NCBI GenBank assembly: GCA_002269645.1
Contig: NIVC01003656.1
Coordinates: 1-37,420, forward strand
DNA: 37,420 nt
Direction: 5' to 3'
Source of the DNA: Macrostomum lignano
Taxonomy: Eukaryota
The notes under the pieces are model-generated. The model saw only the letters and a list, made by a program, of their open reading frames with translations, was not told the origin of the DNA and did no database searches. Numbering within the stretch: the stretch's first letter is position 1; the number at the start of each line of letters is the position of its first letter. Shown here piece after piece: positions 1,030 to 35,559 of the stretch. Made by a program: the position numbers and the translations under genes.

Positions 1030-1076
1030 TACAGTATCAAGGACCACTAGAACTTCTAGTGGTCCTTGTACAGTAT
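1030..1076. mobile_element. 31-bp palindromic micro-element (1038-1068) with 8-bp TSD, hAT-like
   Basis: TACAGTAT | CAAGGACCACTAGAA C TTCTAGTGGTCCTTG | TACAGTAT: perfect 15-bp inverted arms and perfect 8-bp flanking direct repeats. Confidence 0.7.
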
Positions 1077-2492: not shown

Positions 2493-2678
2493 TCAACCGT
2501 CCGAGAGCCGCTCCATCCAGTTGGGTGACTTGAAGAACTCCGGCACCTGTTGGTCCATTCGAGCAATCACCTTGTAGATTGGCTTCTTCCACGACTGCTC
2601 CTGGTCTTTGCTGGCTGACAGGGCCTTGAAGAACTCACGCAGGGTTGCCTCGATCACATTGCGAAAATGGCTGGGGAC
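2493..2678 (-). CDS. pros: Prospero/PROX coding exon 5 (last; Prospero domain C-terminus)
   Basis: Acceptor cccgcag|, then VPSHFRNVIEATLREFFKALSASKDQEQSWKKPIYKVIARMDQQVPEFFKSPNWMERLSDG*. Matches the Prospero-domain hallmark (LREFF...SWKKxIYKVI). 186 nt, phase 0. Confidence 0.97.
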   Translation of the reverse strand, partial: VPSHFRNVIEATLREFFKALSASKDQEQSWKKPIYKVIARMDQQVPEFFKSPNWMERLSDG

Positions 2679-2761
2679 CTGCGGGTTGGGGGAGCGGATG
2701 GGATGAACTGGGATTCTGGGGATTTAAATTTGTCTTCTATGGTTGTCGAAAGGGTGCGGGA

Positions 2762-2912
2762 TGGCAAGTAACCAAACTCTTAAGTATGGGACTGGGAGTG
2801 TGGGGTGGCAGGTAACCAAGCTCTAAAGTGTGGGGAATGGCAGTGTGGGGTGGCAGGTAACCAAGCTCTAAAGTGTGGGGAATGGGAGTGTGGTGTGGCA
2901 GGTAACCAAAGT
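2762..2912. repeat. 45-bp minisatellite, about 3.3 copies, in pros intron 4
   Basis: TGGCAGGTAACC recurs at 2806, 2851 and 2896, with a variant at 2762. Confidence 0.9.
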
Positions 2913-3125: not shown

Positions 3126-4890
3126 CTGCAAGGAGACGGGGAGAGAGGCTTGGAATTTTAGTCGCTGATTATCTTACTTATAGTAAGTAGTAGTGTAAAT
3201 TTCAGTCACCGCAGAACTAGCATCTGCGAACTCCCATTGATTCATTGATTCAAACATGTACGCTCTTGGAAAATCTGCTGGGAACCAATCTGGGACAGTA
3301 CTGCATGACTTTATCTCGAAGACACAATTCAAAGCTTTGTTCAACAAAGCCATTCGGATCGGAATTTAATACGAGACAAAAACCTCCATTATTGGCAGCA
3401 AATATATTGAGCAAGGAAGGAAGACAATGCTGAATTGAGCACAGTAAACTCGCAGCTTTGAGCAAAGCAGTGAGTGACAGTGAGCAGTATTTTAGAGGAT
3501 TATTAGGTGTCCAAGTGTCAACTGATGGTGGCGATAATGGCCCACTGAGGGACATTAAATGGACAATGTGCAGTGGGGCGGGGCAGTGTGGACCCGGCCT
3601 CCAGTTAGTTCCCCGTGTGGCGTGGTTTGAGCTGAACAAACAAGCAAAGCTGCAACATTCGCTGGCTCGGGATGGGCAGCGGGATCTGATGAGTGTTTAG
3701 TGCGATGATGAGATGAAGGAAATAGAAGTTTGAGAGTGCCAGAGACAGTGGAGTCCCGGGCTGACGGTCTTATTTGAGCGGCCAAACCCTGAGCACGCGG
3801 CCCCGCCAGCTTCACCCTCTTGAGTCCCTCACGGCCGGCCTTGAGTCTCTGCTTCTCCTAGGCCGGGGAGGGGGGCGATGTTTGACCAAGACCCCCAGGC
3901 GCCCGAAGGTGCGCTGATAGTTAATTATTTTGATGACCCAGCCGAGGCCCAGAAATCTACACTTTGCCTTCATTCCGGGCCCACCCTCATCCACTTGGTT
4001 GCATTCTCACCTCCCCCCCCCTAACGCGTATGGGGGAAGAGCTCCCCTGAGATCACTTCTCAATATCCGCGATTCCCTCGGCAAGCAGAAATTTGGGAAT
4101 AATGAAGAGAGGTGGTGCAGAGGCGAAGAACCAAAGCGAGTAAGTCAAATAAGCATTTTGGGTTGCCGCTGTTAGTCAGATTTAGTGAGCCTCGGCTTCT
4201 CCCTGTAACCTTCTCCTGCAGTGTTGACTCTGCCTCGGGTCCGAAGCGCCACCAAATCACCCCCCCCCCCGCGGTGAGTCGGCCAAGTTGCCTAATCTGG
4301 GAAACCCACCATGGAATTGGGAAAACTATTTTTCCAGTTTAAATCATTGGGCAAAAGTTATAAAACATCTCTGAGAATGGCGCCAAGTAAGATGCGGAGC
4401 TGTTTCAAGTCAGCAGAGTCGCCAAGTTGTAGTCGGGCCGCTTCCTAACTCAATTTGGCAACCCGCGAGCTTTTCACAAAATACGGAATCCCCCTAGAAA
4501 CTGTCTTCCCCGATCCCACAGCGAATTCCCACCAGGGGTTTGAGGCCGGGGTCGCCACTTAAGACCCGGGGAAGAACCGGTGGTGCCGACGCTTCAAAAG
4601 TGGCTAAAGCAATTTTCTCCGGAAAAAATACGCCGCGCAGATGCCAAGAATGACTCGACAAAAAGAGGCCTGTCCGGAACATCTGCATAAATTTCTTTGC
4701 TGCGACTCGACTCGCAACTTTCCCTTCTGTGCCACCTCTCTCTCTGCCTCTCGCCTCCACGGCCTCATAAACTGATTATTTGGCTTCTGAACTGAGGACT
4801 CCGAAACATCTCTGCTTTCAGCTTCAAGGGACTGGCAGCAGCCCTGCCTGTCTCTACGTTCTGACTTTCAGTTTGCCCTTGTATCTTGCT

Positions 4891-5800
4891 CACTGTCTCT
4901 CCCCCTGTCTCTCTCCCTGTCTCGCTCCCCGTCTCTCCCCCTGTCTCTCTCCCTGTCTCGCTCCCCGTCTCTCCCCCTGTCTCTCTCCCTGTCTCTCCCC
5001 CTGTCTCTCTCCCTGTCTCTCCCCCTGTCTCTCCCCCTGTCTCTCTTCCTGTCTCTCCCCCTGTCTCTCTCCCTGTCTCTCTACCTGTCTCTCCCCCCCG
5101 TCTCTCTCCCTGTCTCACTCCCTGTCTCTCTACCTGTCTCTCCCCCTGTCTCTCTCCCTGTTTCTCTACCTGTCTCTCTCCCAGTCTCTCCCCCCGTCTC
5201 TCCCCCCGTCTCTCTCCCTGTCTCTCCCCTGTCTCTCTCCCTGTCTCTCTACCTGTCTCTCTCCCAGTCTCTCCCCCCGTCTCTCCCCCGTCTCTCTCCC
5301 TGTCTCTCCCCCCGTCTCTCCCCCCGTTTCTCTCCCTGTCTCTCCCCCTGTCTCTCTCCCTGTTTCTCTACCTGTCTCTCTCCCAGTCTCTCCCCCGTCT
5401 CTCCCCCGTCTCTCTCCCTGTCTCTCTCCCTGTCTCTCTCCCTGTCTCTCTACCTGTCTCTCCCCCTGTCTCTCTCCCTGTCTCTCTACCTGTCTCTCTC
5501 CCAGTCTCTCCCCCCGTCTCTCTCCCTGTCTCACTCCCTGTCTCTCTACCTGTCTCTCCCCCTGTCTCTCTCCCTGTTTCTCTACCTGTCTCTCTCCCAG
5601 TCTCTCCCCCGTCTCTCCCCCGTCTCTCTCCCTGTCTCTCCCCCTGTCTCTCTCCCTGTCTCTCTACCTGTCTCTCTCCCAGTCTCTCCCCCCGTCTCTC
5701 CCCCCGTCTCTCTCCCTGTCTCTCTACCTGTCTCTCTCCCTGTCTCTCTCCCTGTCTCTCTACCTGTCTCTCCCCCGTCTCTCTCCCTGTCTCACTCCGT
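4891..5800. repeat. Degenerate ~12-bp pyrimidine-rich minisatellite (CCCTGTCTCTCT / CCCCGTCTCTCC / TACCTGTCTCTC) in pros intron 3
   Basis: Direct reading; source of the SPCL/VSLP ORFs. Confidence 0.95.
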
Positions 5801-5855
5801 CTCTGTCCATGCCACAACCCCTGCCAGTCTTTCTTCGCATCCGTCTCTCTCTCAG

Positions 5856-5856
<1 letters not shown>

Positions 5857-5928
<72 letters not shown>
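5857..5928. repeat. (CT)n microsatellite
   Basis: About 36 perfect CT units. Confidence 0.98.
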
Positions 5929-5939
<11 letters not shown>

Positions 5940-7407: not shown

Positions 7408-7935
<528 letters not shown>

Positions 7936-8956
7936 TTGGTTGGTAGAGTACATGTAGATCGGTAGGTAAATAAGCAGACAGTGTGAGATTGACACAAAAG
8001 AACTCAGGCAGACAAGAAGCAGAAAGCGGGTGCTCTCGACTTTTTCCTGCCGCGCCTCTTCTTTTCTGCCCCGTCACGAACCCAAAAACGCATTTTCTGG
8101 CCTTCAGTCAGCTTTCTTCATTGTTCCCCCCAGTTTCCTTCTGTTTCCTTCTTCCGGGCAAAGGCTAAAGAAACACAAATTATGGAGCAGCTTTTTGAAA
8201 GCAAAATGAGGGCCCCGGTTTTTCTTTGCCCGACCGCCGTTCCCGCACCCTCTGACGAGCAGGCAGCCTGCAGCAGCCGCCGACTTCCGCTAGAACTGAA
8301 GTGCCAGTTCTGTCATTTTCTTTGTCTTTCGCTGTCCCACTTGGAGCGCGGGCCATTGACTTTGAACTGTACAGCTGGGCATTTCCAGCCCTTCTAAAAC
8401 TCCTATGGCCTCCCATACATAGAGACGGGCCTCGCGATAGCAAAGTGAACAGCATTTCGGAGCTGTCGTAGAATTCTTTATGGGCCTCTCAGGTTTCTCG
8501 AAGGAGCAGGCGGGCCACTACTGAGGTGTCGAGTTCGATGACTTGCTGCTCCCCACGCATCCCCAGGGGAGCCCGGCGGTCGAGCAGTTTAAAACCCAAT
8601 CCAAGCAATTTCTTCGAAGAATTCTGGCACAGGATTCCTGGAGACCAGCCGCTGGAATCAGATATTCATGGGGGCGGGTGGGGGGGGAGAAGACTCGAGC
8701 TGTTCGATGCCCCATCAATTTTAGATTCAGGAGAGTCTCGAAGTGGGAATTCCTGCGGCCTGCGCGTAAGAGATGGGCAGAGCCGAGAAATGTCATCAAG
8801 GAGTGCGCGGCTAATTTTCTTGCTTGGGTTGCTGGGTTGGATTGCCTGTGTCTCCTAGGAGAAGGGGGCACAGATGGAAGCGAATGGGGCTGATGCATCT
8901 TCCAGTCTTGAAGGAATTTGTTTAGAAAAGAAACAAAAATAGCGCATGCCAAATTC

Positions 8957-9166
8957 GAAACGGCGCATCTCATTCTTGAAACGGCGCATCTCATTCTTGA
9001 AACAGCGCATCTCATTCTTGAAACAGCGCATCTCATTCTTGAAACAGCGCATCTCATTCTTGAAACGGCGCATCTCATTCTTGAAACAGCGCATCTCATT
9101 CTTGAAACGGCGCATCTCATTCTTGAAACGGCGCATCTCATTCTTGAAACGGCGCATCTCATATTC
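8957..9166. repeat. 21-bp minisatellite GAAAC(G/A)GCGCATCTCATTCTT x10
   Basis: Ten near-perfect units starting about 40 nt inside pros intron 2. Confidence 0.97.
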
Positions 9167-9205
9167 AAAACAGCGCCTGCGAAAAAATTTTTTCGAAAAG
9201 AATAC

Positions 9206-9511: not shown

Positions 9512-10250
9512 CTGCGATTGTCCGGTCAGGAGGAGAGACCATGGAGTTAGGCCATAGACATTCCCACCTGACACTTTCGGGCCAAAGTGTCAATCAGTTA
9601 GAAGCTGGGTGTTAATTCATACTTCTCAGGAAATTTCTCCTTTTTTAAAGACGAGACAAGAAAACTCCCTCCAATGGCTTATTGTTCCCCGCGTACCTCA
9701 TCTCTTCTCTCTTGCCATTTCTGCTTTCACTTCTAATTCAGAGAAAGAGAGAGAGGGGGAGACAAAAGAAGGCTCTGGCACTTGGTTGATGAAGAAGAAA
9801 TTTTTCTCCAAGTTTCCCCTTCAGCCAGCCATCAAAAACTGTTGCTTCTGCTACAAAGCCAGAAATCCGGTCCGTTGCTGTCGAGAAAACGCAAAAGAAT
9901 AAAAGGAAGCAGGGAGATTCTCTCAAGTGTCCTCTCTCTCTCTCTCTCGCAGTGTCAAGACATGCGCCCAGCCTCTTTCATAACAGATGCAGCGCATCAG
10001 CGGCCCCGCACACCGCGCGAATGAATAACGCATGAAGCCTGCACCCGTAATTAAATAGAAGATTCTTTTGCCTGGGAATGCGGCCCCTCCACTTGCGCCT
10101 CCTTAGCCAGCGTGGGAAAACTTTCCCGAACCGCTGTACCTTGGCCGGCTGCCTCAGCTCAACTCAGTTTCCTTTGTCTGCGCCAGGAGAAATGAGGTGG
10201 GGCAGGAGAAACCCTGGACGAAAAAACAATAATGAACGGCCCCGGCTCAC

Positions 10251-12026
10251 CTTAGTTCGCTTCTTCTTGGGGGTGTTCACCACCAGAGGCAGGGCCTCGC
10301 ACTGCTCCCCGCTCTGCTGGAAGCTGGACAGCAGGTGGTTCATCGATGAGTGCTGCTGCTGAGGCGCCTGCGGCTGTTGCTGCGGTGGCTGCTCCTTCTT
10401 CTGGAAGAGGCCAGCAGCAGCGGCTGAGTAGAATGATGACGGATGCGGCAGCTGCGGAGCCTGCGGCGGCGGTGGCGGTGGCGGCGGTGGCGGCGGCGGC
10501 GGTGGCGGCGGAGGCGCGCAGGCGAACTGCGGAGGCAGCGCACCGCGCCAGTGCTCCTCGATGAGGCGGCGCCCGAACTCCGGCAGCGAGTAGAGCGGAT
10601 GCGGAGGCGGATGCTGGTGCGGATGCTGATGCGGATGCGGCGGCAGTTTTGGAAAGCGGGCGGCGGCGGCCTCTTCAAACAGCTGCGAGACGTGCGGCAT
10701 TGAGAGGCCATAGAGACCCAGCCCTCGCTGCTGCTGCTGCTGCTGCTGATGTTGTTGCAGCTGCTGAAATTGCTGCTCCTGCAGCCGGGCCGCTGCCAGA
10801 CGCAGCTGAGCCTTCATGCCTTCGCGAATTTTCGCCATTAACGAATCGACCATCTTGCTGACATCCTCGCTCACCTGCTTCTTGAGTGAATCGGCCAGAC
10901 TGCGGATCTGCGCCTCGGTCAGGAAGGGCGCCAGGCCCGCCTGCTGGGTCGGCGGAGGCGGCGGCGGCAGCTGCGGGCCGCGTGACGGCTGCGACACCTG
11001 CGGCTGCTGCGGCTTCTGCTGGTGAGCCGGTTGAAGCTGCGTCGACGGCTGCTGCTGCTGTGGCTGCTGCTGTGGTTGCTGCGGCTGCTGCCGGGGCTGC
11101 GGCGGCCTTGAAATTTTCGCCGATGTCTCGCAGCTCGACGCGGTGTCGTTTAGAAGCGAGTCACTCAGCAGAGAGGCCGCCGCCACGGCCTCCGTACCGC
11201 TGCTGCTGCTGTTGATGTTGCCGCTGCCGCCGCCGCCGCCGCCGCCGCTGTGGACTCCACTAGCGCCGCTCTCCCCATCCGACTCCGGCGCGGGGCTGCC
11301 CGCCTGGCCGCAGGAGGCCAGCAGGAGCCTGGAATAGTCCGCCTGCATCTGCGTCAGCCGCTCCTTCACCTTCTGGATCTCGGAGCGCATCTCGGCCGAC
11401 TGAAGCAGCTGGTGCGGCCCCAACAGCGGCTGCGGCGAGCTCTGCTTCCGCTTGCTCTGTCGGCGGCGAACGCTGCTCACAATGTCTTCGATTCTGGCGC
11501 GCTTCGCCCGACTGCCGGTGGCGCCTTCGAAGTCGTCCGTGTCGTCCCCATCGAGGTCGCCTTCGGCATCGTCGGAGGCCGTGGCAACGGCAGCGGCGGC
11601 GGCTGCGTCGGCTTCGACCTCCTCTCGAACGTCGGTGTCGTCGGCATCTCCCGCAGACAGGCCAGCGGCGCTGCCGAAATAATCTGCCTCGTCCTCGTCC
11701 TCCTCCTGGCCGGCCGAGGCGATTTTCAAAGCGAGCGGCTGATCGCAGGCTTCTTCCGCCTCTCTTCCGGCCGCAGCTTCTCCGGCCTCATCATCGTCCA
11801 TCGCCTCTTCATCATCGTCGTCTCCGTCAGCCTCATCGTCGGCGTCCTGCATGGCGGCTCGGCTGGGCCGGAGGATGCTGCGGACATAGTAGTCCGCGAG
11901 CTTGCGCTGCTCCTGACTGTCCGGCTGGCCGACTTCGGCTGGTGGCACCGAAGCCTCAGCATCCGCGCTGCTGTCCGCTTGCAGCATTGCGGAGGCCGCC
12001 GGCGGTTTGGCTGCCGCGCTCATCAT
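10251..12026 (-). CDS. pros: Prospero/PROX coding exon 1 (low-complexity N-terminus)
   Basis: MMSAAAKPP..., with PROX motifs KRARIEDIV, LADSLKKQVSEDVSKMVDSLM and EALPLVVNTPKKKRTK|gtgagc. Poly-Q/P/A/D tracts; 592 codons. The start ATG is inferred, so a few upstream codons are possible. Confidence 0.92.
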
Positions 12027-12097
12027 CTCGACGACTGTTGAACTGCAGAGTTGGCGCTCGATACTGACCAGCAAGTTCCGGATGTGCGATCCGAGTC

Positions 12098-12113
12098 CTG
12101 CACGGAAGGTTAG
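12098..12113 (-). other. Splice acceptor upstream of the pros ATG
   Basis: Minus strand ttt-CTAAC-cttccgtg-CAG|G: branch point, pyrimidine tract and AG, 71 nt before the ATG. Confidence 0.6.
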
Positions 12114-13506
12114 AAAGCAGATTTGGAGCAGAAATAACTTTCGAATCGGGGGAGAAGGGAGGGTGGCGCTGAGCTGTCTAAACTTGAAACTCCACAAGCT
12201 TTGGGGGGTCTCGTTTTGTTTTTAGGAGAAACTGGCGGCGACTGGAAGGGTTGCGGGAGCTGGCGGCGGGGAGGGGGTTGGGAACAGGAAGTCGCTCATC
12301 TGGGATCGATGATGGCCGGGGAGGAGTCAAGATCCGGCTTGTATTTTTACAAGGGGAAGGCAGCAGCTTCTCTGTCGCTTCTCTCCATCAACTTTGCCGC
12401 CAACTGGCGGTTCAAGCCGATGGAAACTTATTCGAAAGAAATTACCCCACCAGGCCGCTTAAGATAATGATTCGCTTCCTCCAAATTGTTCGAAGGGGGC
12501 GCACGGAGCAATTATCCCCAAAATGGATAGGATCCTCATCCCCCCCCCCCCAGCCGGGAGCTGAGAGCGGCTAGCTATAGGAAAGCAATTTAGCTGAGGC
12601 CAAAGTCACTCAGAGTTGCGGAGCTGAAGGCAGGCAAAGCCCCGGCCGTCTGGCGGGAGCGACAGTCGTGGACAAAAATGATGCGGGCATCTTCAAAACA
12701 AAAAAGCCAGCTCAGATGGTTGCGGAGCCTCCCTCTGTGGTGGCGGGCAAGATCGCCATCCCCCCATGACCGGAGCGCTTTAGGAAATTTTCATGAAATT
12801 TTTATGCGCCCCACCCCTCAGAGCGCCACCATCTCCCCGTTAGATCCCCTCGGCGTCCTGAGCCTTCCCAGAGCCTTGCTCAGCTCAGCCCCAGATCAGG
12901 GAGGCAGACTGTTGCTCCGTGGGTTGCACAGTGGGTTCTCATTCAGCGTGTTGCTGCCCCTAAGCAGTTTCTGTCCCTCATCCTTCTTAGCAGCAGCCCG
13001 CACCTCTTCATCAGCAGACTCATCATCGGGTGTTCTGCCGCGTTTTAAGTTTTAAAAACTGAGTTCAACCAGAAACAGAGAGAGACACAGGTGGGTGGGG
13101 ACGGGGTTGCTCAACCTCGTGTCTCCTGCTGCCCCTGCAACTTTGATAATCATTAATTTTATTGCACCTGCGAGGCGCGGAGGGGGGGGCATTCAGCAAT
13201 AAACGCGGAAAACTTCGCGGAGGCCCTGGTTTAAAGAAACCGGCGTTCCCTTGAGTCGCCTGGGCAGGCGCTGAGGATTTTAGGATTGGGATGCGAACAT
13301 CCCCGAGCTCAGTAAGAACTGACGCCTCCCTGATCCCCAATTTTCGGACAATTGTCAGGCAGTAAAAAAGAAACTTCAAATATGAATTATTAATTTTTGA
13401 TTTTTGAGTCACAATCAGATATATCAGTGTCCTGCTCCCAATGCTTCAATGCTGGTAGAACATGGGGCGGGATTTTATTCGGGAAAATATTAAAACGCTT
13501 TTGTTG

Positions 13507-14574: not shown

Positions 14575-19830
<5,256 letters not shown>

Positions 19831-20606
19831 ACCTAACCAACCTTGGTATGTCTTAAGTCACCTGGATTTGTGGCAATTATTCTTTCAACCTTGATTTTAA
19901 AGTTTTTTTTCACTTTACTAAAATCTGTACAGGCGATCCTCAGTAACCGAACCCATCCAGCTAATCAATCAAGAGCTGCCAAGCAGAGCCAGCTGGGCCT
20001 TACGGCTTCAACAGTTCATTTCGCTCCAATAGTTTGTGAAAGATGTCAAAATTTTGTTACAATATTCTTCCTGTAATGCGGTCTTACTTTGTTGCATCAT
20101 ATCGAGCCTTCATCAATCTGTCAGAACTTTCTTATCGCTTCTTTTAGAGACTGACTTTTATGCCCCCCCCCCGTCTGGGCGTGCTCCATCTGGAGTAGCA
20201 ATATCAATACTGATCGCGTATTGCTGCGCGCGGCCTTCGTCTTTCGACAATGCGGGAAGAACAAGAGGGTAGCGACGATCGGCCACGTGTTGTGCGCGAT
20301 AATATTTTTAGAGATGGCTTTTATGACTGGCAGATCAAGGCATGAGGACAGCTCGTCAGCTGAGTTGACTGGGAGAGGTCCGAGACCCTCATCTTCATCA
20401 GTTTTGGAGTCTTCTTTCTGAATTGGATCCTCTGCAGTTCCGAGGTCTACTGCAGGTTCACATGCGGGTGGGTTGCTGATCGCATTTCCTCATTGAAGGC
20501 AATATCTGCTCTGGGGTCTTTTTTAGTTTTCTAATCATTTTCCTCTTCAGGTATCAAGCTGATAGCATTTAGTTAGCGGTAGAATGAATGCAGATTACAC
20601 AGGCAT

Positions 20607-21135
20607 AGTAGGTCAGACAAGTAGGTCGGACAGGAAGGTCAGACAGGTAGGTAAAGACAGGTAGCTAAAGATAGGTAGGTGAGGACAGTTTGGTAAAGAC
20701 AGGCTGGTAAGGACAGGTAGGTAAAGACAGGTTGGTAAGGACAGGTATGTAAAGACAGTTAGATAAAGACAGGTAGGTAAATACAGGTAGGTAAAGACAG
20801 GTAGGGTAAAGACAGGTAGGGTAAAGACAGGTAGGTAAAGACAGGTAGGTAAAGACAGGTAGGTAAAGACAGGTAGGTAAAGACAGGTAGGTAAAGACAG
20901 GTAGGTAAAGACAGGTAGGTAAAGACAGGTAGGTAAAGACAGGTAGGTAAAGACAGGTAGGTAAAGACAGGTAGGTAAAGACAGGTAGGTAAAGACAGGT
21001 AGGTAAAGACAGGTAGGTAAATACAGGTAGCTAAAGATAGGTAGGTAAGGACAGTTAGGTAAAGACAGGTAGGTAAAGACAGGTAGGTAAAGACAGGTAG
21101 ATAAGGACAGGCAGGTAAAGACAGGTAGGTAAAGA
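20607..21135. repeat. 14-bp minisatellite AGGTAGGTAAAGAC
   Basis: Perfect core at about 20830-21010 with degenerate edges. Confidence 0.96.
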
Positions 21136-21644
21136 AAGATAAGTAAATATGAGGTTAGTCATAGCAGGTAAATACAATACGCTATGACGCCATAACCAGG
21201 TGCAAAATCATCTCTCAGTTGAGTGCAGCTCCTTCTTCTTCACGAGTGTTTCATCTTTCCTCTTTGGGCAAGATAAATTTCTATCGCAATAAATTTCCCC
21301 ACCTGAGATGAGGAGGCCAGAAGGTGGGTCTCTTCTCTCTCCCACCTCTCAAGACTTATCTTCGCAGAGTTTTTTTGTTAAAATCCTTTCAGATTCTGAT
21401 CCTCGACTTTCTCATTTAATAATAATAAAAATGGTGGCAGCTCTGCACCCTTCTGCAATGATGATTTTTTTTGCAAGGAGCTCCTTGACTCGATCGCCAT
21501 CTGTTCGATAGTTGCACCTAATTGCAGGACCAGCTCAATGGTGCCAACCCCCCTCCCATTTTCTGACAACTTTAGTCTCACTGCAGACAAGTTTGTGTGT
21601 TATATTTTGCTAAACTTTCTCAAATTATAAGGATTGATAAAAAC

Positions 21645-22251
21645 AAATTAGATCATAGATTGCACTAAAATACAAATTAGATCATAGATTGCACTAAAAT
21701 ACAAATTAGATCATAGATTGCACTAAAATACAAATTAGATCATAGATTGCACTAAAATACAAATTAGATCATAGATTGCACTAAAAAACATTAGATCATA
21801 GATTGCACTAAAATACAAATTAGATCATAGATTGCACTAAAATACAAATTAGATCATAGATTGCACTAAAATACAAATTAGATCATAGATTGCACTAAAA
21901 TACAAATTAGATCATAGATTGCACTAAAAAACATATTAGATCATAGATTGCACTAAAATACAAATTAGATCATAGATTGCACTAAAATACAAATTAGATC
22001 ATAGATTGCACTAAAAAACATATTAGATCATAGATTGCACTAAAATACAAATTAGATCATAGATTGCACTAAAATACAAATTAGATCATAGATTGCACTA
22101 AAATACAAATTAGATCATAGATTGCACTAAAAAACATATTAGATCATAGATTGCACTAAAATACAAATTAGATCATAGATTGCACTAAAATACAAATTAG
22201 ATCATAGATTGCACTAAAATACAAATTAGATCATAGATTGCACTAAAATAC
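21645..22251. repeat. 29-bp AT-rich minisatellite AAATTAGATCATAGATTGCACTAAAATAC x~21
   Basis: Period of 29 (21645, 21674, ...); highly homogeneous, no spacers. Confidence 0.97.
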
Positions 22252-22298
22252 ACAAATACGCAACCAAACGGCTCCGGAGCCTCCTGGACCAGCTGTTT

Positions 22299-22348
22299 CC
22301 CCGACCAGGGAATACTCGAGTATAGTATAGAGTATTCCCTGCCCCAAC
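22299..22348. mobile_element. 36-bp hairpin micro-element (22306-22341) with near-perfect 7-bp flanking direct repeats
   Basis: CCCCGAC | CAGGGAATACTC GAGTATAGTATA GAGTATTCCCTG | CCCCAAC. Confidence 0.45.
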
Positions 22349-25790: not shown

Positions 25791-26613
25791 AGGAATGAAG
25801 GGAGCGAAGATTAGGAATGAAGGGAGCGAAGATTAGGAATGAAGGGAGCGGAGATTAGGAATGAAGGGAGCGGAGATTAGGAATGAAGGGAGTGGAGAAT
25901 AGGAATGAAGGGAGCTGAGATTAGAAAAGAAGGGAGCAGAGATCAGAAATTTAGGGAGCGGAGATTAGGAATGAAGGGAGCTGAGATTAGAAATGAAGGG
26001 AGCAGAGATTAGAAATGAAGGGAGCAGAGATCAGAAATGTAGGGAGTGGATAGGAATGTAGGGAGCGGATAGGAATTTAGGGAGCGGATATGAATGTAGG
26101 GAGCGGATAGGAATGTAGGGAGCAGATAGGAATGTAGGGAGCGGATAGGAATTTAGGGAGCGGATATGAATGTAGGGAGCGGATAGGAATGTAGGGAGCG
26201 GATATGAATGTAGGGAGCGGATAGGAATGTAGGGAGCGGATATGAATGTAGGGAGCGGATAGGAATGTAGGGAGCGGATAGGGATGTAGGAAGCGGATAG
26301 GAATGTAGGGAGCGGATAGGAATGTAGGGAGCGGATATGAATGTAGGGAGCGGATAGGAATGTAGGGAGCGGATAGGAATGTAGGGAGCGGATAGGAATT
26401 TAGGGAGCGGATATGAATGTAGGGAGCGGATAGGAATGTAGGGAGCGGATATGAATGTAGGGAGCGGATGGGAATGTAGGGAGCGGATATGAATGTAGGG
26501 AGCGGATATGAATGTAGGGAGCGGATATGAATGTAGGGAGCGGATAGGAATGTAGGGAGCGGATAGGAATGTAGGGAGCGGATAGGAATGTAGGGAGCGG
26601 ATAGGAATGTAGG
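25791..26613. repeat. Minisatellite grading from 22-bp AGGAATGAAGGGAGCGGAGATT to 19-bp AGGAATGTAGGGAGCGGAT
   Basis: Unit length changes at about 26040. Confidence 0.95.
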
Positions 26614-27036
26614 AAACTTCAAAGAAAAAGATGAAGCCGTGAAAACGAGATGCCAGGCTCCATCAACTGCTTCCCAGAATAATTTTCCCCGATCATTTTG
26701 TTTCGATTTTCGAAAGCCAACGGAAGCTGCGCCAAGTCGGTTGGCACGCCGGCCGCTGCTTCATCAAATCCAGAGGGGCGATCGCGAGGCAAATGGCAGC
26801 TTCTTGAGAAGTCGCTTTCCCACTCCCGGGCACTGAGAGAGGAAATTGTCCCTTGCGATGTCTTAATTTCCTGTGCCGACACGCATAGACGTTGCCCTCC
26901 CCCCAGATTTTCTTTGTTCGATTTTTCCCGCATCTTGGCGCGGTTTTCAGTTCCTGATGCCGCGCACCTCCGGCTGCTGCCCGCTTTCTCGGAGACTCCG
27001 CCCGCGGGTCCTTATAATCTCTTTGATCGCTTTAAT

Positions 27037-27505
27037 CCCTCTAGTCTCTCTGATCCCTCTGATCCCTCTAATTTCTCTAATCTCTCTAATCTCTCTGATC
27101 TCCCTAATCTCTCTAATCACTTTTTGATCTCTTTAGTCCCTCTAAACTCTCTGATCTCTCTAATTTCTCTAATCTCTCTAATCTCTCTAATCTCTCTGAT
27201 ATCTCTGATTTCTCTGATTTCTCTAAACTCTCTAAATCTCTCTGATCTCTCTAATCTCTCTAAACTCTCTGATTTCTCTAATTTCTCTAATCTCTCTAAT
27301 CTCTCTGATCTCTCTGATCTCTCTATAACTTCTCTAATCTCTTTTTGATCTCGCTAATCTGTCTAATCTCTCTGATCTCTCCAATCCCTCTAATCTCTCT
27401 GATCTCTCTAATCTCTATAATCCCTCTAATGCCATTAATCCCTCTATTCTCTCTAATCTCTCTAATCTCTTTAATTCCAGTAACCCCTCTATTCCCTCTA
27501 ATCTC
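27037..27505. repeat. Degenerate 9-bp repeat CTCTCT(A/G)AT
   Basis: Direct reading; source of the ISL ORFs. Confidence 0.92.
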
Positions 27506-28200
27506 TCCCCATCCCCAATCAGGAATCCAGAAAGACCCAATCTCTAAATCGCCCCCCCTCAGTCGCAGTTCAATGGATAATCAGTGGAGACGGGAGCGCA
27601 GGAGATCGAGATGTCTGAAGGAGGAAAAAGCGCAGCCCAGGCGCCATCAGTCACAGAGACCCGCTGAGCCGAGCAGATCCAGTCTGCTTATCCAGAATTC
27701 GCGAGCAACTGCTTTGGCCAAAAAGAGAACCTAAAAATCCCTCCCACTGCTTCTCTTCTAGAAGAAGAGAGAGAAGAGATTACAGCAGCAAGGAACGAAG
27801 CCTAAGACAATGGATGAACGGTTGCTGGAGGCCTCCCCCCCCCCGGTAAGATACCGGTGCCGCCGCTCTGCCATCCGCCCTCCTCACCAAAGCATTGTTG
27901 CGATAAAGAAATAAAAAGCTAAAAAATGAGACTTCTGCAGACGAAAAAGCAAGCCGGCGATCGCTTTGGTTGCTGAGGAGGGGGGAGGGCAAAATGATGG
28001 GCTTGCAGGAAGAGTTTTTTGCTTTTGTCTGCGCTGAGCACATCTTCTCCGCACCGCTGGAGATTTCCTGCATCTTTTGTATTCCCACAGTCAAGGATAA
28101 TTATTGATAAACAAAGGCAGAGGAACCCCTGCTGGTGAAAAGGAGCAGCAGAATTTTTAACTTTCTACTAAATACTAATCTTCCTTTTCTGCATCCTCTT

Positions 28201-29005
28201 CCCCTCAGCCTCCTCTTCTCTCCCTTCAATCTCCCCATCTCTCCCTGCAACCTCCCCATCTCTCCCTTCAACCTCCCCATCTCTCCCTTCAACCTCCCCA
28301 TCTCTCCCTTCAACCTCCCCATCTTTCCCTTCAACCTCCCCATCTCTCCCTGCAACCTCCTCATCTCTCCCTTCAACCTCCTCATCTCTCCCTTCAACAT
28401 CCTCATCTCTCCCTTCAACCTCCTCATCTCTCCCTGCAACCTCCCCATCTCTCCCTTCAACCTCCCCATCTTTCCCTTCAACCTCCCCATCTCTCCCTGC
28501 AACCTCCTCATCTCTCCCTTCAACCTCCTCATCTCTCCCTTCAACATCCTCATCTCTCCCTTCAACCTCCTCATCTCTCCCTGCAACCTCCCCATCTCTC
28601 CCTTCAACCTCCCCATCTTTCCCTTCAACCTCCCCATCTCTCCCTGCAACCTCCCCATCTCTCCTTTTAACCTCCTCATCTTTCCCTTCAACCTCCCCAT
28701 CTCTCCCTGCAACCTCCCCATCTCTCCCTTCAACCTCCTCATCTTTCCCTTCAACCTCCCCATCTCTCCCTTCAACCTGCCCATCTCTCCCTGCAACCTC
28801 CCCATCTCTCCCTTCAACCTCCTCATCTTTCCCTTCAACCTCCCCATCTCTCCCTTCAACCTCCTCATCTTTCCCTTCAACCTCTTCATCTTTCCCTTCA
28901 ACCTCCTCATCTTTCCCTTCAACCTCCCCATCTCTCCCTTCAACCTCCTCATCTCTCCCTTTAACCTGCCCATCTCTCCCCTCAGCCACCCCATCTCTCC
29001 CCTCA
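28201..29005. repeat. 21-bp minisatellite CTCCCCATCTCTCCCTTCAAC x~37
   Basis: Direct reading; a 7-unit (147-bp) block is duplicated internally. Confidence 0.97.
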
Positions 29006-29108
29006 GTCTCCTTTCTCTGCCTGAGCTACCAGTATCTCAAACGATTAAAGATGGACATCTTTTTTTGCTAAGTCAATTAGACAGAATAAAAGGGTACACA
29101 TAAGATTG

Positions 29109-29114
29109 TTTATT
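29109..29114 (-). terminator. Candidate polyadenylation signal (AATAAA) of the FHAD1-like gene
   Basis: TTTATT on the plus strand, about 220 nt downstream of the predicted stop. Confidence 0.45.
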
Positions 29115-29332
29115 TACGCATCTCTTTGATAACAGCAAACAGGTTTGAGTAGCGCTCTACCAGCTAATATTACAAAAGATTAAAATAATAATAATATATC
29201 AGAGAGTGAAGACTTGTGAGCAAAGAGATAAAAAATTGACAGGTAGAATGCAGCTGAAAATCACTTTAATGTCCGCGAGCCTCGGAAATCATACAGCTGG
29301 GATCGTATGTACAGCAGCGAGCAGAACCTGTG

Positions 29333-29377
29333 TCAGACTTCTCCGCCTCCCAGCAGCTCGGATTCGTGCGGAAGACC
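29333..29377 (-). CDS. FHAD1: FHAD1-like putative terminal exon [14 protein letters not shown]
   Basis: Acceptor accgccag|GGT in phase 0 matches the upstream donor CTG|gttggt; ends in TGA. Confidence 0.55.
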
Positions 29378-29392
29378 CTGGCGGTGTTGGAG

Positions 29393-29571
<179 letters not shown>

Positions 29572-29666
29572 CGCATAATTGCGTGATTCCAGTTTTCACT
29601 GTTTTTCTACTTGCAGTAGATAATTCGCATATTCAACAAAAATCCAATAGGACTAAAAGAACCAAC

Positions 29667-29807
29667 CAGTGAAGTCTGCAGCCGGGACAGCTTGGTGCTG
29701 GCATTGCGCAGGTCCTTCTCCCGCGAGCGCAGCTCCGCCTTCAGCGAAGCGATCTCATAGTCCTTGCGCTTCATTCTCTCCCGGATGGCTCGCTTGCGCG
29801 CGGCCTC
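29667..29807 (-). CDS. FHAD1: FHAD1-like exon
   Basis: atctcag|EAARKRAIRERMKRKDYEIASLKAELRSREKDLRNASTKLSRLQTSL; coiled coil, phase 0. Confidence 0.85.
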
Positions 29808-29959
29808 CTGAGATTAAGCGAAGGGAATTTAAAAGTTGAGCATATTTTTTAGATTAGATAGAGGCGGTCGGACACACAATGCAAAAAGTACGGGAGAACT
29901 CTGTTGAGCACTTGTTAAATAACACCTGATAATTTTTTACTGTTTAATTGTCCCACAGT

Positions 29960-30494
29960 CCAAATATCCCAAATATCCCAGTATCACAATATCCCACATC
30001 CCAATATCAATATCCCACATCCCAATATCCCACATCCCAATATCCCACATCCCAATATCCCACATCCCAATATCCCACATCCCAATATCCCACATCCCAA
30101 TATTCCACATCCCAATATCCCACATCCCAATATCCCACATCTCAATATCCCACATCCCAATATCCCACATCCCAATATCCCACATCCCAATATCCCACAT
30201 CCCAATATCCCACATCCCAATATCCCACATCCCAATATCCCACATCCCAATATCCCACATCCCAATATCCCACATCTCAATATCCCACATCCCAATATCC
30301 CACATCCCAATATCCCACATCCCAATATCCCACATCCCAATATCCCACATCCCAATATCCCACATCCCAATATCCCACATCCCAATATCCCACATCCCAA
30401 TATCCCACATCCCAATATCCCACATCCCAATATCCCACATCCCAATATCCCACATCCCAATATCCCACATCCCAATATCCCACATCCCAATATC
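29960..30494. repeat. 15-bp minisatellite CCCAATATCCCACAT x~35
   Basis: Near-perfect array filling the intron. Confidence 0.98.
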
Positions 30495-30519
30495 CTCCCT
30501 CCCCTTTCCACCGGCCAAC

Positions 30520-31041
30520 CTTTTCCTCTCCGTCGCTGTCATCAGCTGCGGGCGCAGCTTCAGCAGGCCGCGGCCGAGACTTCGCAACGATGGCCGAGGT
30601 GGCACCGCCTCCGCCGCCTCCGCCTCCATTCGCAGTCGCCGCCTTGGCCTGGCCGAGGCTGGCTCTGAGCAGCTCCGATTCTTCCGTGCGCGCCCGAAGC
30701 TGCTCGGCCAGCGCGTCGACCTGCGCCGAGCGCGCCTCGGCCAGTTGGAGCGCCTGGCGCAGGCGCGCCAAGTCGCCGTCGTAGCCCTCCAGCAGCTGGT
30801 CCTTGCGCTCGGCGCGCTCCCGCATCTGACGGACCCGCTCGGCGATGAGCTCGGCGGCTTTGTCCCGCTCGGAGGTCAAACGGCGCCGCTCGGCAACGTC
30901 GGCCGCCTGCGACATCGGCAGCTGGCCGGGGAGGGGGCCGGTGAGGCGGAGCGCGCCGGTCAGGGCGCTGACCAGGCTGAGGTAGCAGCGCTCGGACGCT
31001 TCCAGACTGGCGGCCGCCTGCGCGTGCGTGCTGCGCTCCGT
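30520..31041 (-). CDS. FHAD1: FHAD1-like exon
   Basis: ccccag|TERSTHAQAAASLEASERCYLSLVSAL...ERKDQLLEGYDGDLARLRQ...GEEK|gttggc. 522 nt, phase 0/0. Resembles the FHAD1 C-terminal motifs as I recall them (ALELSEKLY; RKEELLRGYEKD). Confidence 0.85.
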
Positions 31042-31059
31042 CTGGGGGTTTGGGCGGTG

Positions 31060-31655
31060 GGGGATTTCCTCACTTGAGCTGGGAAATCGCGGGAAATCCC
31101 AAATGGAAGGGATTCCCCGTAGTAATGACCTTAACGGAAATCCTAATAGGTGGGATTCCCTGAGCGATTAATCAGACGGAATTCTCTTCCACCGAAGGGA
31201 TTCCCAGTAGTAGTGATCTGAGTAAAGATATCAAAACTTGGGGTTCCAAGGAACATTTATTTAAGGGAAATCCCAATGAGAGGGACTTCACATAAAATAA
31301 AAAATCCCTTTCTCAACTAATTCGACGAAAATCCCAATGAGGATTCTGCATCACAATCTGAAACAATTCCCATACTGATTAACTTGACTGAAATCCCAAT
31401 GGGATAGATTCATTCCTCTGACTGGTTAAAAAGATGGAAATCCCAAAAGAGAGATTCCAATTCTCAATGAATTCGAGGGAAATCCCAGTAGGGGGAAACC
31501 CTAGAGTGGTTAATTAGATGGAAATCCCCTTGGAGGGATTCCCCTTCTTAAAGAATTTTCAATGAATTCGAGGGAAATCCCAGTAGGGGGAAACCCTAGA
31601 GTGGTTAATTAGAGGGAAATCCCCTTGGAGGGATTCCCCTTCTTAAGAGGGACTT
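31060..31655. repeat. Diverged ~45-bp dyad-symmetric repeat (GGAAATCCC...GGGATTCCC) with a 95-bp-period duplication
   Basis: Motif pair recurs about 12 times; near-identical ~84-bp blocks start at 31466 and 31561. Confidence 0.8.
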
Positions 31656-31689
31656 CACAAATGAGTTAAAAAGCGCAGTGCAGCCAAAC

Positions 31690-31880
31690 CTGCAGCTCAG
31701 CATTCGTGGTGGCAATCCTGGCCAATCCGGTGGATCCCAGCTCCTTGTCCAGGTCCCCAGCCAGGCCAGTGGGAGTCTGCGAGTACCGGCCGGTCTCGGC
31801 CAGCGCCTGCCGCGATCGCATCTCGGCCAGCTCGCGTTTGAGCAGCGCCACCTGCTGCACCGTGTGGTCGTGGCTGTTGG
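31690..31880 (-). CDS. FHAD1: FHAD1-like exon
   Basis: tcgccag|..NSHDHTVQQVALLKRELAEMRSRQALAE...NAELQ|gtttgg. 191 nt, phase 1 to phase 0. Confidence 0.82.
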
Positions 31881-32049
31881 CTGGCGAAGGCGGTACGTAG
31901 GGTTTAATAAGGGGATTTTTCAACTCTGGGATTTTAACTTTTTTCAATGTAGAAGGTGGCGATTTTTTTGGGAAGTTGGGGAACTTTCTGTGGTAGCCTC
32001 CCCCCACAGTTCCTGAAGGGGATTCTGTTTGGGAGAAGAAACTGGGAAA

Positions 32050-32685
32050 GGGGAGGTTCTACCTGGGAAAGAGGAGATTCTACCTGGTGAAGGGGAGATT
32101 CTACCTGGGAAAGAGGATATTCTACCTGGGAAAGAGGAGATTCTACCTGGGAAAGAAGATATTCTACCTGGGGAAGGGAGATGCTACCTGGGAAAGAGGA
32201 GATTCGACCTGGGAAAGGGGATATTCTACCTGGGAAAGGGGATATTCTACCTGGGGAAGGGGAGATTCTACTGGGAAAGAGGAGATTCTACCTGGGGAAG
32301 GGGATATTCTACCTGGGAAAGGGGAGATTCTACCTGGGAAAAGGGAGATTCTACCTGCCTGGGGAAGGGGAGATTCTACCTGGGGAAGGGGAGGTTCTAC
32401 CTGGGAAAGGGGAGATTCTACCTGCGGAAGGGGAGGTTCTACCTGGGAAAGAGGAGATTCTACCTGGGGAAGGGGAGATTTTACCTGGGAAAAGAGAGAT
32501 TCTACCTGTGGAAAGAGGAGATTCTACCTGGGAAAGGGGATATTCTACCTGGGAAAGGGGAGATTCTACCTGGGAAAAGGGAGATTCTACCTGGGGAAGG
32601 GGAGATTTTACCTGGGAAAAGAGAGATTCTACCTGTGGAAAGAGGAGATTCTACCTGGGAAAGGGGATATTCTACCTGGGGAAGG
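32050..32685. repeat. 21-22-bp minisatellite GGGAGATTCTACCTGGGAAAG x~29
   Basis: Direct reading; source of the GKGEILP ORFs. Confidence 0.96.
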
Positions 32686-32738
32686 GCAGTTTCTCCACGG
32701 AGGGAGAGGATTCAACGAGTCCATCTCCAGTCACTCAC

Positions 32739-34228
32739 TGGTTGGCCTGCCCAGCTCCAAGTCCTTCAGCCGCTGCCGCAGTTCGCTGAGCGCCTCGCGC
32801 TGGTGCCGAATGATGTCGGCGTGTCGCTCGCCCCGGCACTGGTGGCCCAGCGCTGCGAGCTCCGACTCCACAGTGCCGCTGTCGGCCCGGGCCTCCGCCG
32901 CCTCCGCCGCCGCCTCCGCCGCCTCCGCCGCCTTCGCTTTGGCGGCCGAATTTGACGAGATTCGATCGGCCTGCTGGCGCAGCTGCTGCTGCAGCTCCTT
33001 GGCTTGGGCGTCCCGCGCCTCCAGCGTCGACTTCAGTTTCTTGATGACACCGCGCTGCTTCTCCAGCTGGGCCGCGGACTCGGCAAGCCGGTCACGCTGC
33101 CGCTCCGTCAGCTCCGTCAGCTTGTCCGCCCGGGCGTTCGCGGCCGCGGCCTCCGCTTCCGCGTTGCGCTGACGCCGGCGACAGGCCTCCAGCTCGGCGG
33201 TGGACCGCGGCGGCTGTGGCGACGGCTGCTGCTGTGGTGGCGGAGGCGGCTGTGCAGCCCGCGATGCAGCAGCCGCTGCCGGCGTTGCTGCCGCGGCCTC
33301 CGCTTCGGCCAGCCGAGTTGCCAGGCGGCCGAGCTCCGCTCGGATGCCCGCGTTTTCTCGGCGCAGCGAGGCCGCCTCCGCCTCGGCGGCGTCCAGCTTT
33401 GCCTTGGTCGACTGGAGATCGCCAGATGCTTCAGCTGGAGCCAGCGGTGGCGGCGGCGGAGCCTCGATCGGGGGCGTTGGCGTTGGATCGACTGTCTTCA
33501 CGGAAGCGTTGGATGGTTCAGCTTGCTTCTGCTGCTGCTGCTGCTGCAGGCGCTGCTGCTCCGCCAGCTGTTGTTCCAACTGCCGCTGCTGCAACTCGTG
33601 CCGGGACCGCATGCTGTCCGCCTCGCTCCGCGCCGACTCCAGGTCAGTTTGCAGTCGGCCGCCCTGGCGCCGCGTCTCCTCCAGCTCGTCTTGCAGCCGG
33701 CGATTTTCCGCCGACAGCCTCCGGAGTTGCTCGCGCAGCTCGCGCGCCTCCGCCTCGCGCCGCTCGTCCGACTTGCGCGCCGCCGCGTCCGAAGCCTCGC
33801 CGCCGGCCTCCGCCTCGGCCAGGCGGGCGCGCAGATCGGCCTCTCGTTGGCGCACCTCCTCCAGCTCCTTGGCCAGGGCGCCGCCGCGAGCCGCTTCCTC
33901 GTCATGGCGCCGTTTAAGCGCCTCTTCCAGGTCGGCGAGCGCCGCGCGCTGACCAGCGGCCTCGCGCTCGGCTGCCTCTCGCCGGCGCTCGGCCTCGGCA
34001 GCGACTGCGGCCTCCACGGCGGCGGCGCGCTCCGACGGGCCTCGGCGGCGGCGGCTTCCAGGGCGTCGGCAAGCCGCGCCTCCCAGTCCCGGCGCAGCCG
34101 TTCGCCCAATTCGGTCAGGTCGGAGCCGGCGCGCGACTCCAGCTCGGCTAGGCGAGCTCGGGAGCGCGCCAGCTGGGCTTCAGTGTCGGACCAGCGCGCT
34201 CGCAACTGCGCCAAATGATGCGCCGGGC
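32739..34228 (-). CDS. FHAD1: FHAD1-like large coiled-coil exon with a 1-nt frameshift near 34032
   Basis: ccctcag|..[12 protein letters not shown]...EARR /shift/ ERAAAVEAA...[33 protein letters not shown]..a|gtgagt. The CRGERH...QREALSELR motif matches FHAD1 as recalled. Length 1490 is 1 nt short for phase 1/1. Confidence 0.85.
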
Positions 34229-35048: not shown

Positions 35049-35158
35049 CTGCGGCAAAATTTAGGAATGATGGATCTCTGGAGTGACCATCTGGGCGGGT
35101 GACTGTTCTTGCTGATCCTCTTTGCTGCTGCTGGACGCTTTGAAACTTCGCTTGTCAA

Positions 35159-35543: not shown

Positions 35544-35559
35544 TCAGAGTGCCACTCAC

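What the first reader, a model, noticed from the sequence alone, without database searches (positions are those of the whole stretch)
1030..1076. 31-bp pure-palindrome mobile element with a perfect 8-bp target-site duplication
Seen: TACAGTAT, then a 15-bp arm, a single C, the exact reverse-complement arm, then TACAGTAT. Knowledge: 8-bp TSDs and (C/T)A(A/G)NG termini characterise hAT DNA transposons, and CAAGG fits. Inference: a non-autonomous element reduced to two abutting TIRs, much smaller than typical MITEs and easily missed by repeat finders. It lies about 1.4 kb past the pros stop, so it may be a hairpin in the 3' UTR.
Basis: partly seen in the sequence, partly recalled or inferred. Interest (0 to 1): 0.7.

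Follow-up and report, generated by a model that had tools for sequence, protein, structure and literature searches.

The report
Tiny transposon scar downstream of prospero
A perfect 31-bp palindrome flanked by a perfect 8-bp duplication, 1.4 kb past the prospero gene, is most likely the leftover scar of a cut-and-paste DNA transposon, which is ordinary, and there is no evidence that it is a tiny element that still moves.

Summary
The sequence reads TACAGTAT | 15-nt arm CAAGGACCACTAGAA | C | reverse-complement arm | TACAGTAT at 1030-1076. It lies 1417-1463 nt past the prospero stop codon (2493-2495, minus strand). Chance expectation is about 3e-9 per window.

It is best read as a transposon remnant. 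An element inserted and made an 8-bp target-site duplication, and later all but 15-16 nt of each terminus was lost.

Which family it came from is open:
- The CAAGG terminus and the 8-bp duplication fit hAT.
- hAT excision does not leave termini behind, and the hAT target consensus is only half met.
- The symmetric retention of no more than 17 nt per end matches P-element excision scars (17-nt staggered cut plus end joining).

A 31-bp element would lack the subterminal sequences that hAT and P transposases need, so mobility is unlikely.

No second copy lies in the window, and the source genome could not be searched. Two animal-like metagenome loci carry the same palindrome core with different centres. 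There it has no duplication and sits at one end of a roughly 70-bp shared unit.

A second structure of the same kind, with a CAGGG terminus and a 7-bp 6/7 duplication, lies at 22306-22341. Overall this is ordinary and of low-to-moderate interest.

The parts
1030..1037 (.). Left copy of the 8-bp direct repeat TACAGTAT (putative target-site duplication)
   Evidence: family D4, 100% identity. Together with base 1029 it forms the quasi-palindromic 9-mer ATACAGTAT.
1038..1052 (+). Left arm CAAGGACCACTAGAA (putative outer 15 nt of a transposon terminus; begins CAAGG)
   Evidence: I1, 15 nt, 100% complementary. The same 12-14 nt occur in metagenome loci L002/L004 and L003.
1053..1053 (.). Single central C. 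It is either the 16th base of one terminus or a filler base at the junction.
   Evidence: The centre differs in the related loci: CATC in L002 and nothing in L003.
1054..1068 (-). Right arm TTCTAGTGGTCCTTG, the exact reverse complement of the left arm
   Evidence: I1.
1069..1076 (.). Right copy of the 8-bp direct repeat TACAGTAT
   Evidence: D4. The window flanks beyond the repeats show no similarity to the flanks of L002 or L003.

Best explanation
This is an immobile remnant of a cut-and-paste (TIR) DNA transposon of the 8-bp-duplication class.

Proposed sequence of events:
1. Inferred from the structure: an element whose termini begin CAAGGACCACTAGAA inserted into ...CGA-TACAGTAT-TAG..., and the staggered 8-bp target cut was filled in to give the two TACAGTAT copies.
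2. Inferred: almost the whole element was later lost, and only 15-16 nt of each terminus remained, joined head to head.

The route I think most likely is excision by a transposase that cuts inside the inverted repeat, as P-element/THAP9-type enzymes do. These leave 17-nt 3' overhangs of transposon sequence on the donor, which are then trimmed slightly and end-joined. That naturally gives a near-perfect palindrome of 34 nt or less between intact duplications.

Two other routes lead to the same product:
- Abortive gap repair after excision.
- Deletion between the left terminus and a direct subterminal copy of it at the right end. L002 and L003 show such a terminal hairpin.

The family (hAT or P) is not resolved. 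The scar has no demonstrated function. If long prospero 3' UTR isoforms include it, it would form a strong RNA hairpin.
For: - Exact anatomy and extreme non-randomness.
- The sequence shared with L002/L004 and L003 ends at the inner edges of the direct repeats on the left, and within 2 nt of them (a shared TA) on the right. The window flanks are otherwise unrelated to the flanks of those loci, as expected for an inserted piece.
- The same pattern gives 0 hits in 596 Gb of prokaryotic genomes and 0 in viral contigs. The only other metagenome hit, L001, is a bacterial coding sequence inside an assembly fold-back.
- L004 carries an animal CortBP2 exon, so the core occurs in at least one other animal genome.
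- The centres differ between loci (1, 4 and 0 nt) while the arms are identical, and no locus keeps more than about 16 nt per side.
- P transposase cuts 17 nt inside the inverted repeat, and the donor ends with their 17-nt overhangs are end-joined (PMC7776569; PMC2895639).
- P and hobo both make 8-bp duplications, and TIR elements prefer AT-rich palindromic targets (PMC3276498). The inferred empty site contains ATACAGTAT.
- A second structure of the same type lies at 22306-22341: CAGGG terminus, 36 bp, 7-bp 6/7 direct repeat. Shuffles give about 0.2 such structures per window under the loose criteria, and my own estimate, not run with a tool, is about 1e-4 for 12-nt arms. Such scars therefore recur in this genome.
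Against: - No parent element, transposase gene or second copy with this terminus was found. The source genome could not be searched.
- L002/L004 and L003 carry the core without any 8-bp duplication. There it sits at the end of a roughly 70-bp shared unit, which a simple footprint model does not predict.
- The terminus has no similarity to known P termini that I can recall or that the papers list (CATGATG... for Drosophila P from memory; CATACCTGTCAAC for Pdre2). The P target consensus GTCCGGAC is not met.
- The CAAGG terminus points to hAT, whose chemistry should not leave termini behind.
- The 8-mer is quasi-palindromic, so part of its 'duplication' appearance could come from a longer imperfect palindrome.
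Confidence: 0.58

Rival explanations
1. The 31-bp palindrome is itself a non-autonomous mobile element, a 'micro-MITE' made of two abutting inverted repeats. It would be moved in trans by a hAT (or P) transposase, and it inserted here making the 8-bp duplication.
For: - Perfect arms and a perfect duplication suggest a recent event.
- The CAAGG terminus and the 8-bp duplication fit hAT.
- The same core is present at two other animal-like loci.
- A second small palindrome with a duplication lies in the window.
Against: - There is one copy in 37 kb.
- The other loci lack duplications and are embedded in a larger unit.
- Characterised hAT and P elements need 100-200 bp of subterminal sequence to move: Tol2 needs 200/150 bp and P needs 138/216 bp.
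- The centres differ between loci, which is not expected for copies of one mobile unit.
Confidence: 0.1
2. The palindrome is the terminal hairpin of a larger repeat, for example the 3' stem-loop of a LINE/SINE-type retroposon. It was inserted here as an extremely 5'-truncated copy by target-primed reverse transcription, which also makes target-site duplications of variable length.
For: - In L002 and L003 the palindrome sits at one end of the shared unit. The upstream 28-nt block is conserved (z = 11) and the downstream sequence is unrelated (z about 0).
- The TA that follows the palindrome in L002, L003 and the window could be junction microhomology.
Against: - No reverse-transcriptase ORF or tail repeat lies near L002-L004.
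- No duplication flanks the roughly 70-bp unit.
- The truncation would have to fall exactly at the base of the stem.
- The termini fit a DNA-transposon motif.
Confidence: 0.1
3. This is a local, non-transposon palindrome. A 47-nt imperfect hairpin (about 22 bp with one mismatch and one bulge) arose by fold-back or template-switch repair, or is kept as a structured RNA or DNA element downstream of prospero. On this reading the apparent duplication is a by-product of the self-complementary TACAGTA.
For: - The flanks pair and extend the stem. The fold is much more stable than shuffles.
- In L002 the palindrome likewise extends into the flanks, to 20-nt arms.
- The arms are identical across loci while the neighbouring block differs at 4 of 28 positions. 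This is compatible with constraint on the stem.
Against: - An 8/8 direct repeat needs no mismatch or bulge, whereas the longer-palindrome reading needs both.
- A fold-back copy of the left flank would give ATACTGTA on the right, not TACAGTAT.
- There is no Rfam match.
- There is no local template for the arm.
- Polyadenylation hexamers lie upstream of it in the mRNA sense.
Confidence: 0.12
4. The structure is an assembly or sequencing artefact, such as a small fold-back introduced at a palindromic k-mer.
For: The palindrome is 31 bp, a common k-mer size. L001 shows that fold-back chimeras do occur in public assemblies.
Against: - Artefactual fold-backs produce long inverted duplications of neighbouring sequence. 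They do not produce a 15-nt arm of foreign sequence bounded by an exact 8-bp direct repeat.
- The arm sequence occurs nowhere else in the window.
- The same core exists in independent public contigs.
Confidence: 0.03

Closest known systems
P-element excision footprints (Drosophila P; THAP9/Pdre relatives)
   Same: Both 8-bp target-site duplications are retained. Between them lies a short near-perfect palindrome made of the outer 17 nt or less of each inverted repeat (here 16 + 15). This is the product expected from the 17-nt staggered cut followed by end joining.
   Different: The terminus is unrelated to known P termini. The target is AT-rich and does not match GTCCGGAC. No THAP9-type transposase or full-length element was available to link to it. 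The organism is not a fly: its homeo-prospero domain is at most 76% identical to anything in the protein collection.
hAT superfamily elements and hAT-derived MITEs (Ac/Ds, hobo, Hermes, Tol2)
   Same: The duplication is 8 bp. The inverted repeat is about 15 nt, within the short TIR lengths I recall for hAT (about 10-25 bp; Hermes 17 bp). The terminus fits YARNG (CAAGG, and CAGGG for the second structure at 22306).
   Different: hAT excision forms hairpins on the flanking DNA, so its scars do not contain termini. The nTnnnnAn target rule is half met and nnnTAnnn is not met. There are no subterminal repeats, because there is no interior. The size is far below any hAT MITE I know of (own knowledge).
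Internally deleted non-autonomous elements made by abortive gap repair or direct-repeat deletion (Ds from Ac, KP-type P deletions, P-MITEs)
   Same: Termini and duplication are kept and the interior is lost. The repair-based origin is discussed for P-MITEs in PMC1562414.
   Different: Known derivatives keep about 100 bp or more of each end and remain mobile. This one keeps 15-16 nt per end and is probably dead.

Membership tests
hAT superfamily | 8-bp target-site duplication | tested here: met
   TACAGTAT on both sides, 8/8 identical. This feature is not specific, because P elements also make 8-bp duplications.
hAT superfamily | Terminus (C/T)A(A/G)NG and short inverted repeats (about 10-25 bp) | tested here: met
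The terminus is CAAGG and the arms are 15 nt.
hAT superfamily | Target preference nTnnnnAn (Ac family) or nnnTAnnn (Buster family) | tested here: not met
   In TACAGTAT position 2 is A (T expected) and position 7 is A (correct). The reverse complement also satisfies only one of the two positions. Positions 4-5 are AG or CT, not TA. One site cannot exclude a statistical preference.
hAT superfamily | Longer or autonomous element with the same terminus that encodes a hAT (BED/DDE/dimerisation) transposase | not testable with these tools
   The source genome is not in any searchable collection. None is present in the window or in L002-L004.
hAT superfamily | Excision scar made of altered flanking bases (flank hairpin chemistry), without retained termini | tested here: not met
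   The structure consists of retained termini with unaltered duplications. This argues against a hAT excision scar. It does not argue against a hAT deletion derivative.
P superfamily (excision footprint) | 7-8-bp target-site duplication kept on both sides | tested here: met
   P makes 8 bp and 1360 makes 7 bp.
P superfamily (excision footprint) | 17 nt or less of each terminus retained, joined head to head | tested here: met
   16 + 15 nt here. L002 has 14 + 4 + 14 and L003 has 12 + 12.
P superfamily (excision footprint) | Terminus related to a P-type element that encodes a THAP-domain transposase | not testable with these tools
   No genome access. There is no similarity to the Pdre2 terminus given, or to the Drosophila P terminus as I recall it.
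P superfamily (excision footprint) | GC-rich palindromic target (GTCCGGAC in Drosophila) | tested here: not met
   The target is the AT-rich TACAGTAT. The preference may be lineage-specific.
MITE (mobile miniature inverted-repeat element) | Multi-copy family of near-identical copies, each with its own target-site duplication | tested here: inconclusive
   There is one copy in 37 kb. Two other loci in metagenomes share the core but have no duplication and have different centres. The genome itself could not be searched.
MITE (mobile miniature inverted-repeat element) | Retains the subterminal cis sequences needed by the transposase (typically more than 50 bp in total) | tested here: not met
   The total is 31 bp with no interior.

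The most novel reading that the evidence does not exclude
The 31-bp palindrome is itself a transposable unit, and would be the smallest TIR element I know of in a eukaryote. It would consist only of two 15-nt transposase recognition ends. It would be shared between distant animal genomes (the window, L002/L004 and L003), and here it would have been dropped into a long prospero 3' UTR, where it forms a dsRNA stem of about 22 bp.
Probability: 0.08. Interest if true: 0.65.

Novelty: new member of a known kind. Interest (0 to 1): 0.25.

Why it matters
If this reading is right, the site records a past insertion and loss of a DNA transposon next to a key neural fate gene. Together with the second scar at 22306-22341, it suggests that cut-and-paste elements with CARGG termini were recently active in this little-sampled, repeat-rich animal genome.

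Scars of this size are invisible to standard repeat annotation. Catalogues of them could date transposon activity, and could reveal whether the enzyme cuts in the P style (staggered, inside the repeat) in lineages far from flies. The scar itself has no demonstrated effect on prospero.

Tried and rejected
- **Same-species data.** I made three protein searches: the large prospero exon, the homeo-prospero C-terminus, and concatenated N-terminal segments. I also made two exact look-ups. Nothing closer than 76% identity turned up, so no other haplotype, empty site or genomic copy could be examined.
- **L001.** This hit is a bacterial coding region inside an assembly fold-back, so it is a chance match.
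- **Known RNA families.** There was no Rfam hit at gathering score anywhere in the window. Only noise (E > 6) appeared around the palindrome, and no tRNA was found. L002-L004 likewise gave nothing.
- **U7-snRNA-like reading of the L002/L003 unit** (Sm-like AUUUUUAGAG followed by a 3' hairpin). Dropped, because there is no U7 hit and no histone-complementary stretch.
- **Helitron 3' hairpin.** Dropped, because Helitrons make no duplication, and the end is GTAG with the wrong flanking bases.
- **CRESS-virus origin** (AGTATTA next to the stem). Dropped, because the motif is outside the loop and viral contigs gave 0 hits.
- **Homology between the window flanks and the 28-nt block of L002/L003.** None found.
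- **Duplications around the L002/L003 unit.** None of 9 nt or longer.
- **Literature search for the arm sequence.** It returned only primers and shRNA oligonucleotides.
- **Pfam on ORFs of L003, L004 and the second window gene.** The only hit was a CortBP2 exon in L004, and a PDB search with that exon found nothing.

Full report
**Observation.** The window reads ...cttctaacga TACAGTAT CAAGGACCACTAGAA C TTCTAGTGGTCCTTG TACAGTAT tagcacg... at 1030-1076. The repeat finder reports a 15-nt inverted repeat that is 100% complementary with a 1-nt spacer, and an 8-nt, 100% identical direct repeat directly outside it. With local base composition such a structure is expected 3e-9 times in the window and about 9e-5 times per Gb. 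Block shuffles never reproduce it. The arm occurs nowhere else in the window, even allowing 3 mismatches, beyond what chance gives.

**Context.** The window is animal DNA, very rich in micro- and minisatellites, with strongly varying GC content. A prospero gene lies on the minus strand. Its last two exons are 3125-2981 and 2678-2493, with AG/GT borders, and translate to a typical homeo-prospero C-terminus ending at the TGA at 2495-2493. The best database matches all carry PF05044 but are at most 76% identical. On the mRNA strand, AATAAA or ATTAAA hexamers occur 740, 1037 and 1209 nt after the stop codon, before the palindrome, and again at 2064 and 2481 nt. Whether the palindrome is transcribed is unknown. 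If it is, it forms a very stable hairpin (87 nt, -36.7 kcal/mol, z = -6.2). The stem extends into the flanks because TACAGTA is nearly self-complementary.

**Looking for relatives.**
- The source species is absent from the protein collections. Three searches and two exact look-ups failed.
- A pattern scan for CAAGGACCACTA-N(0-30)-TAGTGGTCCTTG found four metagenome contigs. It found none in 596 Gb of prokaryotic genomes and none in viral contigs.
- L001 is a bacterial coding sequence inside an assembly fold-back, so it is a chance match.
- L002 and L004 are the same locus (99% identical over 2.5 kb). L004 carries a CortBP2-domain exon, so it is animal DNA. L003 is an independent locus.
- L002 reads TTGCTA-CAAGGACCACTAGA-CATC-TCTAGTGGTCCTTG-TAGCAA. 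L003 reads CTA-CAAGGACCACTA-TAGTGGTCCTTG-TAG.
- The core is thus identical to the window over 12-14 nt per arm. The centres differ (1, 4 and 0 nt), and no locus keeps more than about 16 nt per side.
- These loci have no 8-bp duplication.
- L002 and L003 also share a 28-nt block upstream of the palindrome (24/28 identical, z = 11) but nothing downstream (z about 0). In that genome the hairpin therefore sits at one end of a unit of about 70 bp.
- The window flanks show no similarity to that block. What the window shares with those loci is bounded at the inner edge of the direct repeat on the left, and within 2 nt of it (a shared TA) on the right.
- I regard the relationship as likely but not certain. 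One family of chance matches among the many natural palindromes in a terabase-scale collection cannot be fully excluded.

**Mechanism.** A foreign piece bounded by a perfect 8-bp direct repeat is the signature of staggered-cut integration. An 8-bp duplication is typical of both hAT and P elements.

For hAT:
- In favour are the CAAGG terminus and the arm length.
- Against it, hAT transposases make hairpins on the flanking DNA at excision, so hAT scars do not contain transposon termini.
- The Ac-type target rule nTnnnnAn is met at only one of two positions, and the Buster rule nnnTAnnn is not met.

For P:
- P transposase cuts 17 nt inside the inverted repeat. This leaves 17-nt 3' overhangs of transposon sequence on the donor, and these are then end-joined.
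- The expected product is both duplications intact with 17 nt or less of each terminus joined head to head, which is exactly the geometry seen here (16 + 15).
- That route explains the symmetry of the remnant, which random internal deletion does not.
- Against it, the terminus resembles no known P terminus and the target is not GC-rich.

Two other routes give the same product:
- Abortive gap repair after excision (discussed for P-MITEs).
- Deletion between the left terminus and a direct subterminal copy at the right end. The L002/L003 arrangement, a terminal hairpin preceded by a degenerate third copy of the arm, would make this easy.

All these routes share one conclusion: this is a transposon remnant. 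I put about 0.58 on that conclusion, with the P-type footprint as the single most likely route.

**Mobility.** Characterised elements of both candidate superfamilies need far more than the inverted repeats to move. Tol2 needs 200 and 150 bp of its ends, and Drosophila P needs 138 and 216 bp. A 31-bp element has no interior at all. With one copy in 37 kb, and related loci that lack duplications, I rate the 'mobile micro-MITE' reading at about 0.1.

**Rivals.**
- A 5'-truncated retroposon tail is suggested by the end position of the hairpin in L002 and L003. It lacks any reverse transcriptase, tail repeat or duplication there.
- A local 47-nt palindrome would need one mismatch and one bulge where the duplication reading needs none. 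A fold-back copy would give ATACTGTA, not TACAGTAT, on the right.
- An assembly artefact is unlikely for a foreign 15-nt arm with exact direct repeats whose core recurs in independent contigs.

**A second case.** A relaxed scan for short palindromes with 7-9-bp flanking repeats finds only two structures in the window. One is the finding itself. The other is 22306-22341, CAGGGAATACTC-GAGTATAGTATA-GAGTATTCCCTG, flanked by CCCCGAC and CCCCAAC. Shuffles give about 0.2 per window under the loose criteria. Its terminus also fits CARGG, and its 36 bp is again close to 2 x 17. This supports the idea that such scars recur in this genome.

**Verdict.** This is an ordinary kind of object, a DNA-transposon remnant from an uncharacterised family. 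The family assignment to hAT is unproven and the claim of mobility is unsupported. Interest is low to moderate.

Noticed in passing
window 22306-22341: A second short palindrome with duplication-like flanks: CAGGGAATACTC | GAGTATAGTATA | GAGTATTCCCTG, between CCCCGAC and CCCCAAC (7 bp, 6/7 identical). The terminus CAGGG resembles Ac-type hAT ends, and the 36-bp length is close to 2 x 17 nt. It is probably another transposon scar.
   Followed up: partly
window 14575-19841: An uninterrupted (TAAC)n microsatellite of about 5.3 kb (1317 copies, 97% matches). The 14-20 kb region has 26-31% GC and a GC skew down to -0.97.
   Followed up: no
window 4889-5937, 7408-7923, 8942-9176, 20629-22252, 25791-30495, 32042-32694, 35155-35545, 36617-37272: There is a very high density of mini- and microsatellite arrays (48 Tandem Repeats Finder rows), and many of them create long spurious ORFs. 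The genome is unusually rich in tandem repeats.
   Followed up: no
window 10164-12197 (minus strand): A 677-aa open exon, 66% GC, with poly-Q, poly-P and poly-A tracts and a PLVVNTPKKKRTKV motif. It is presumably the large N-terminal prospero exon. It has no detectable relative in the 5.8-billion-protein collection even when the low-complexity parts are removed, so the lineage is poorly sampled.
   Followed up: partly
window 2754-2909: A 45-bp tandem repeat (3.5 copies, 90% matches) lies inside the last prospero intron, between exons 3125-2981 and 2678-2493.
   Followed up: no
window 30277-35158 (minus strand): Several long GC-rich ORFs (212, 428 and 229 aa) encode Ala/Glu/Arg/Leu-rich, coiled-coil-like sequence. 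They look like exons of a second gene and have no Pfam match.
   Followed up: partly
L002 1600-1669 and L003 3302-3373: A shared unit of about 70 bp in animal-like metagenome contigs. It consists of a 28-nt block (TTCAGTTCAG..TAGAGTGGCCT, which contains a degenerate third copy of the arm), a variable spacer, and then the perfect palindrome at the very end of the unit. The arms are identical between the two loci although the block differs at 4 of 28 positions. Its nature is unresolved (transposon end, or a small structured element).
   Followed up: partly
L001 2551-2919: A bacterial metagenome contig (JAAUXY010098739.1) contains an inverted duplication of about 260 bp within a coding region. 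It looks like an assembly fold-back chimera.
   Followed up: partly
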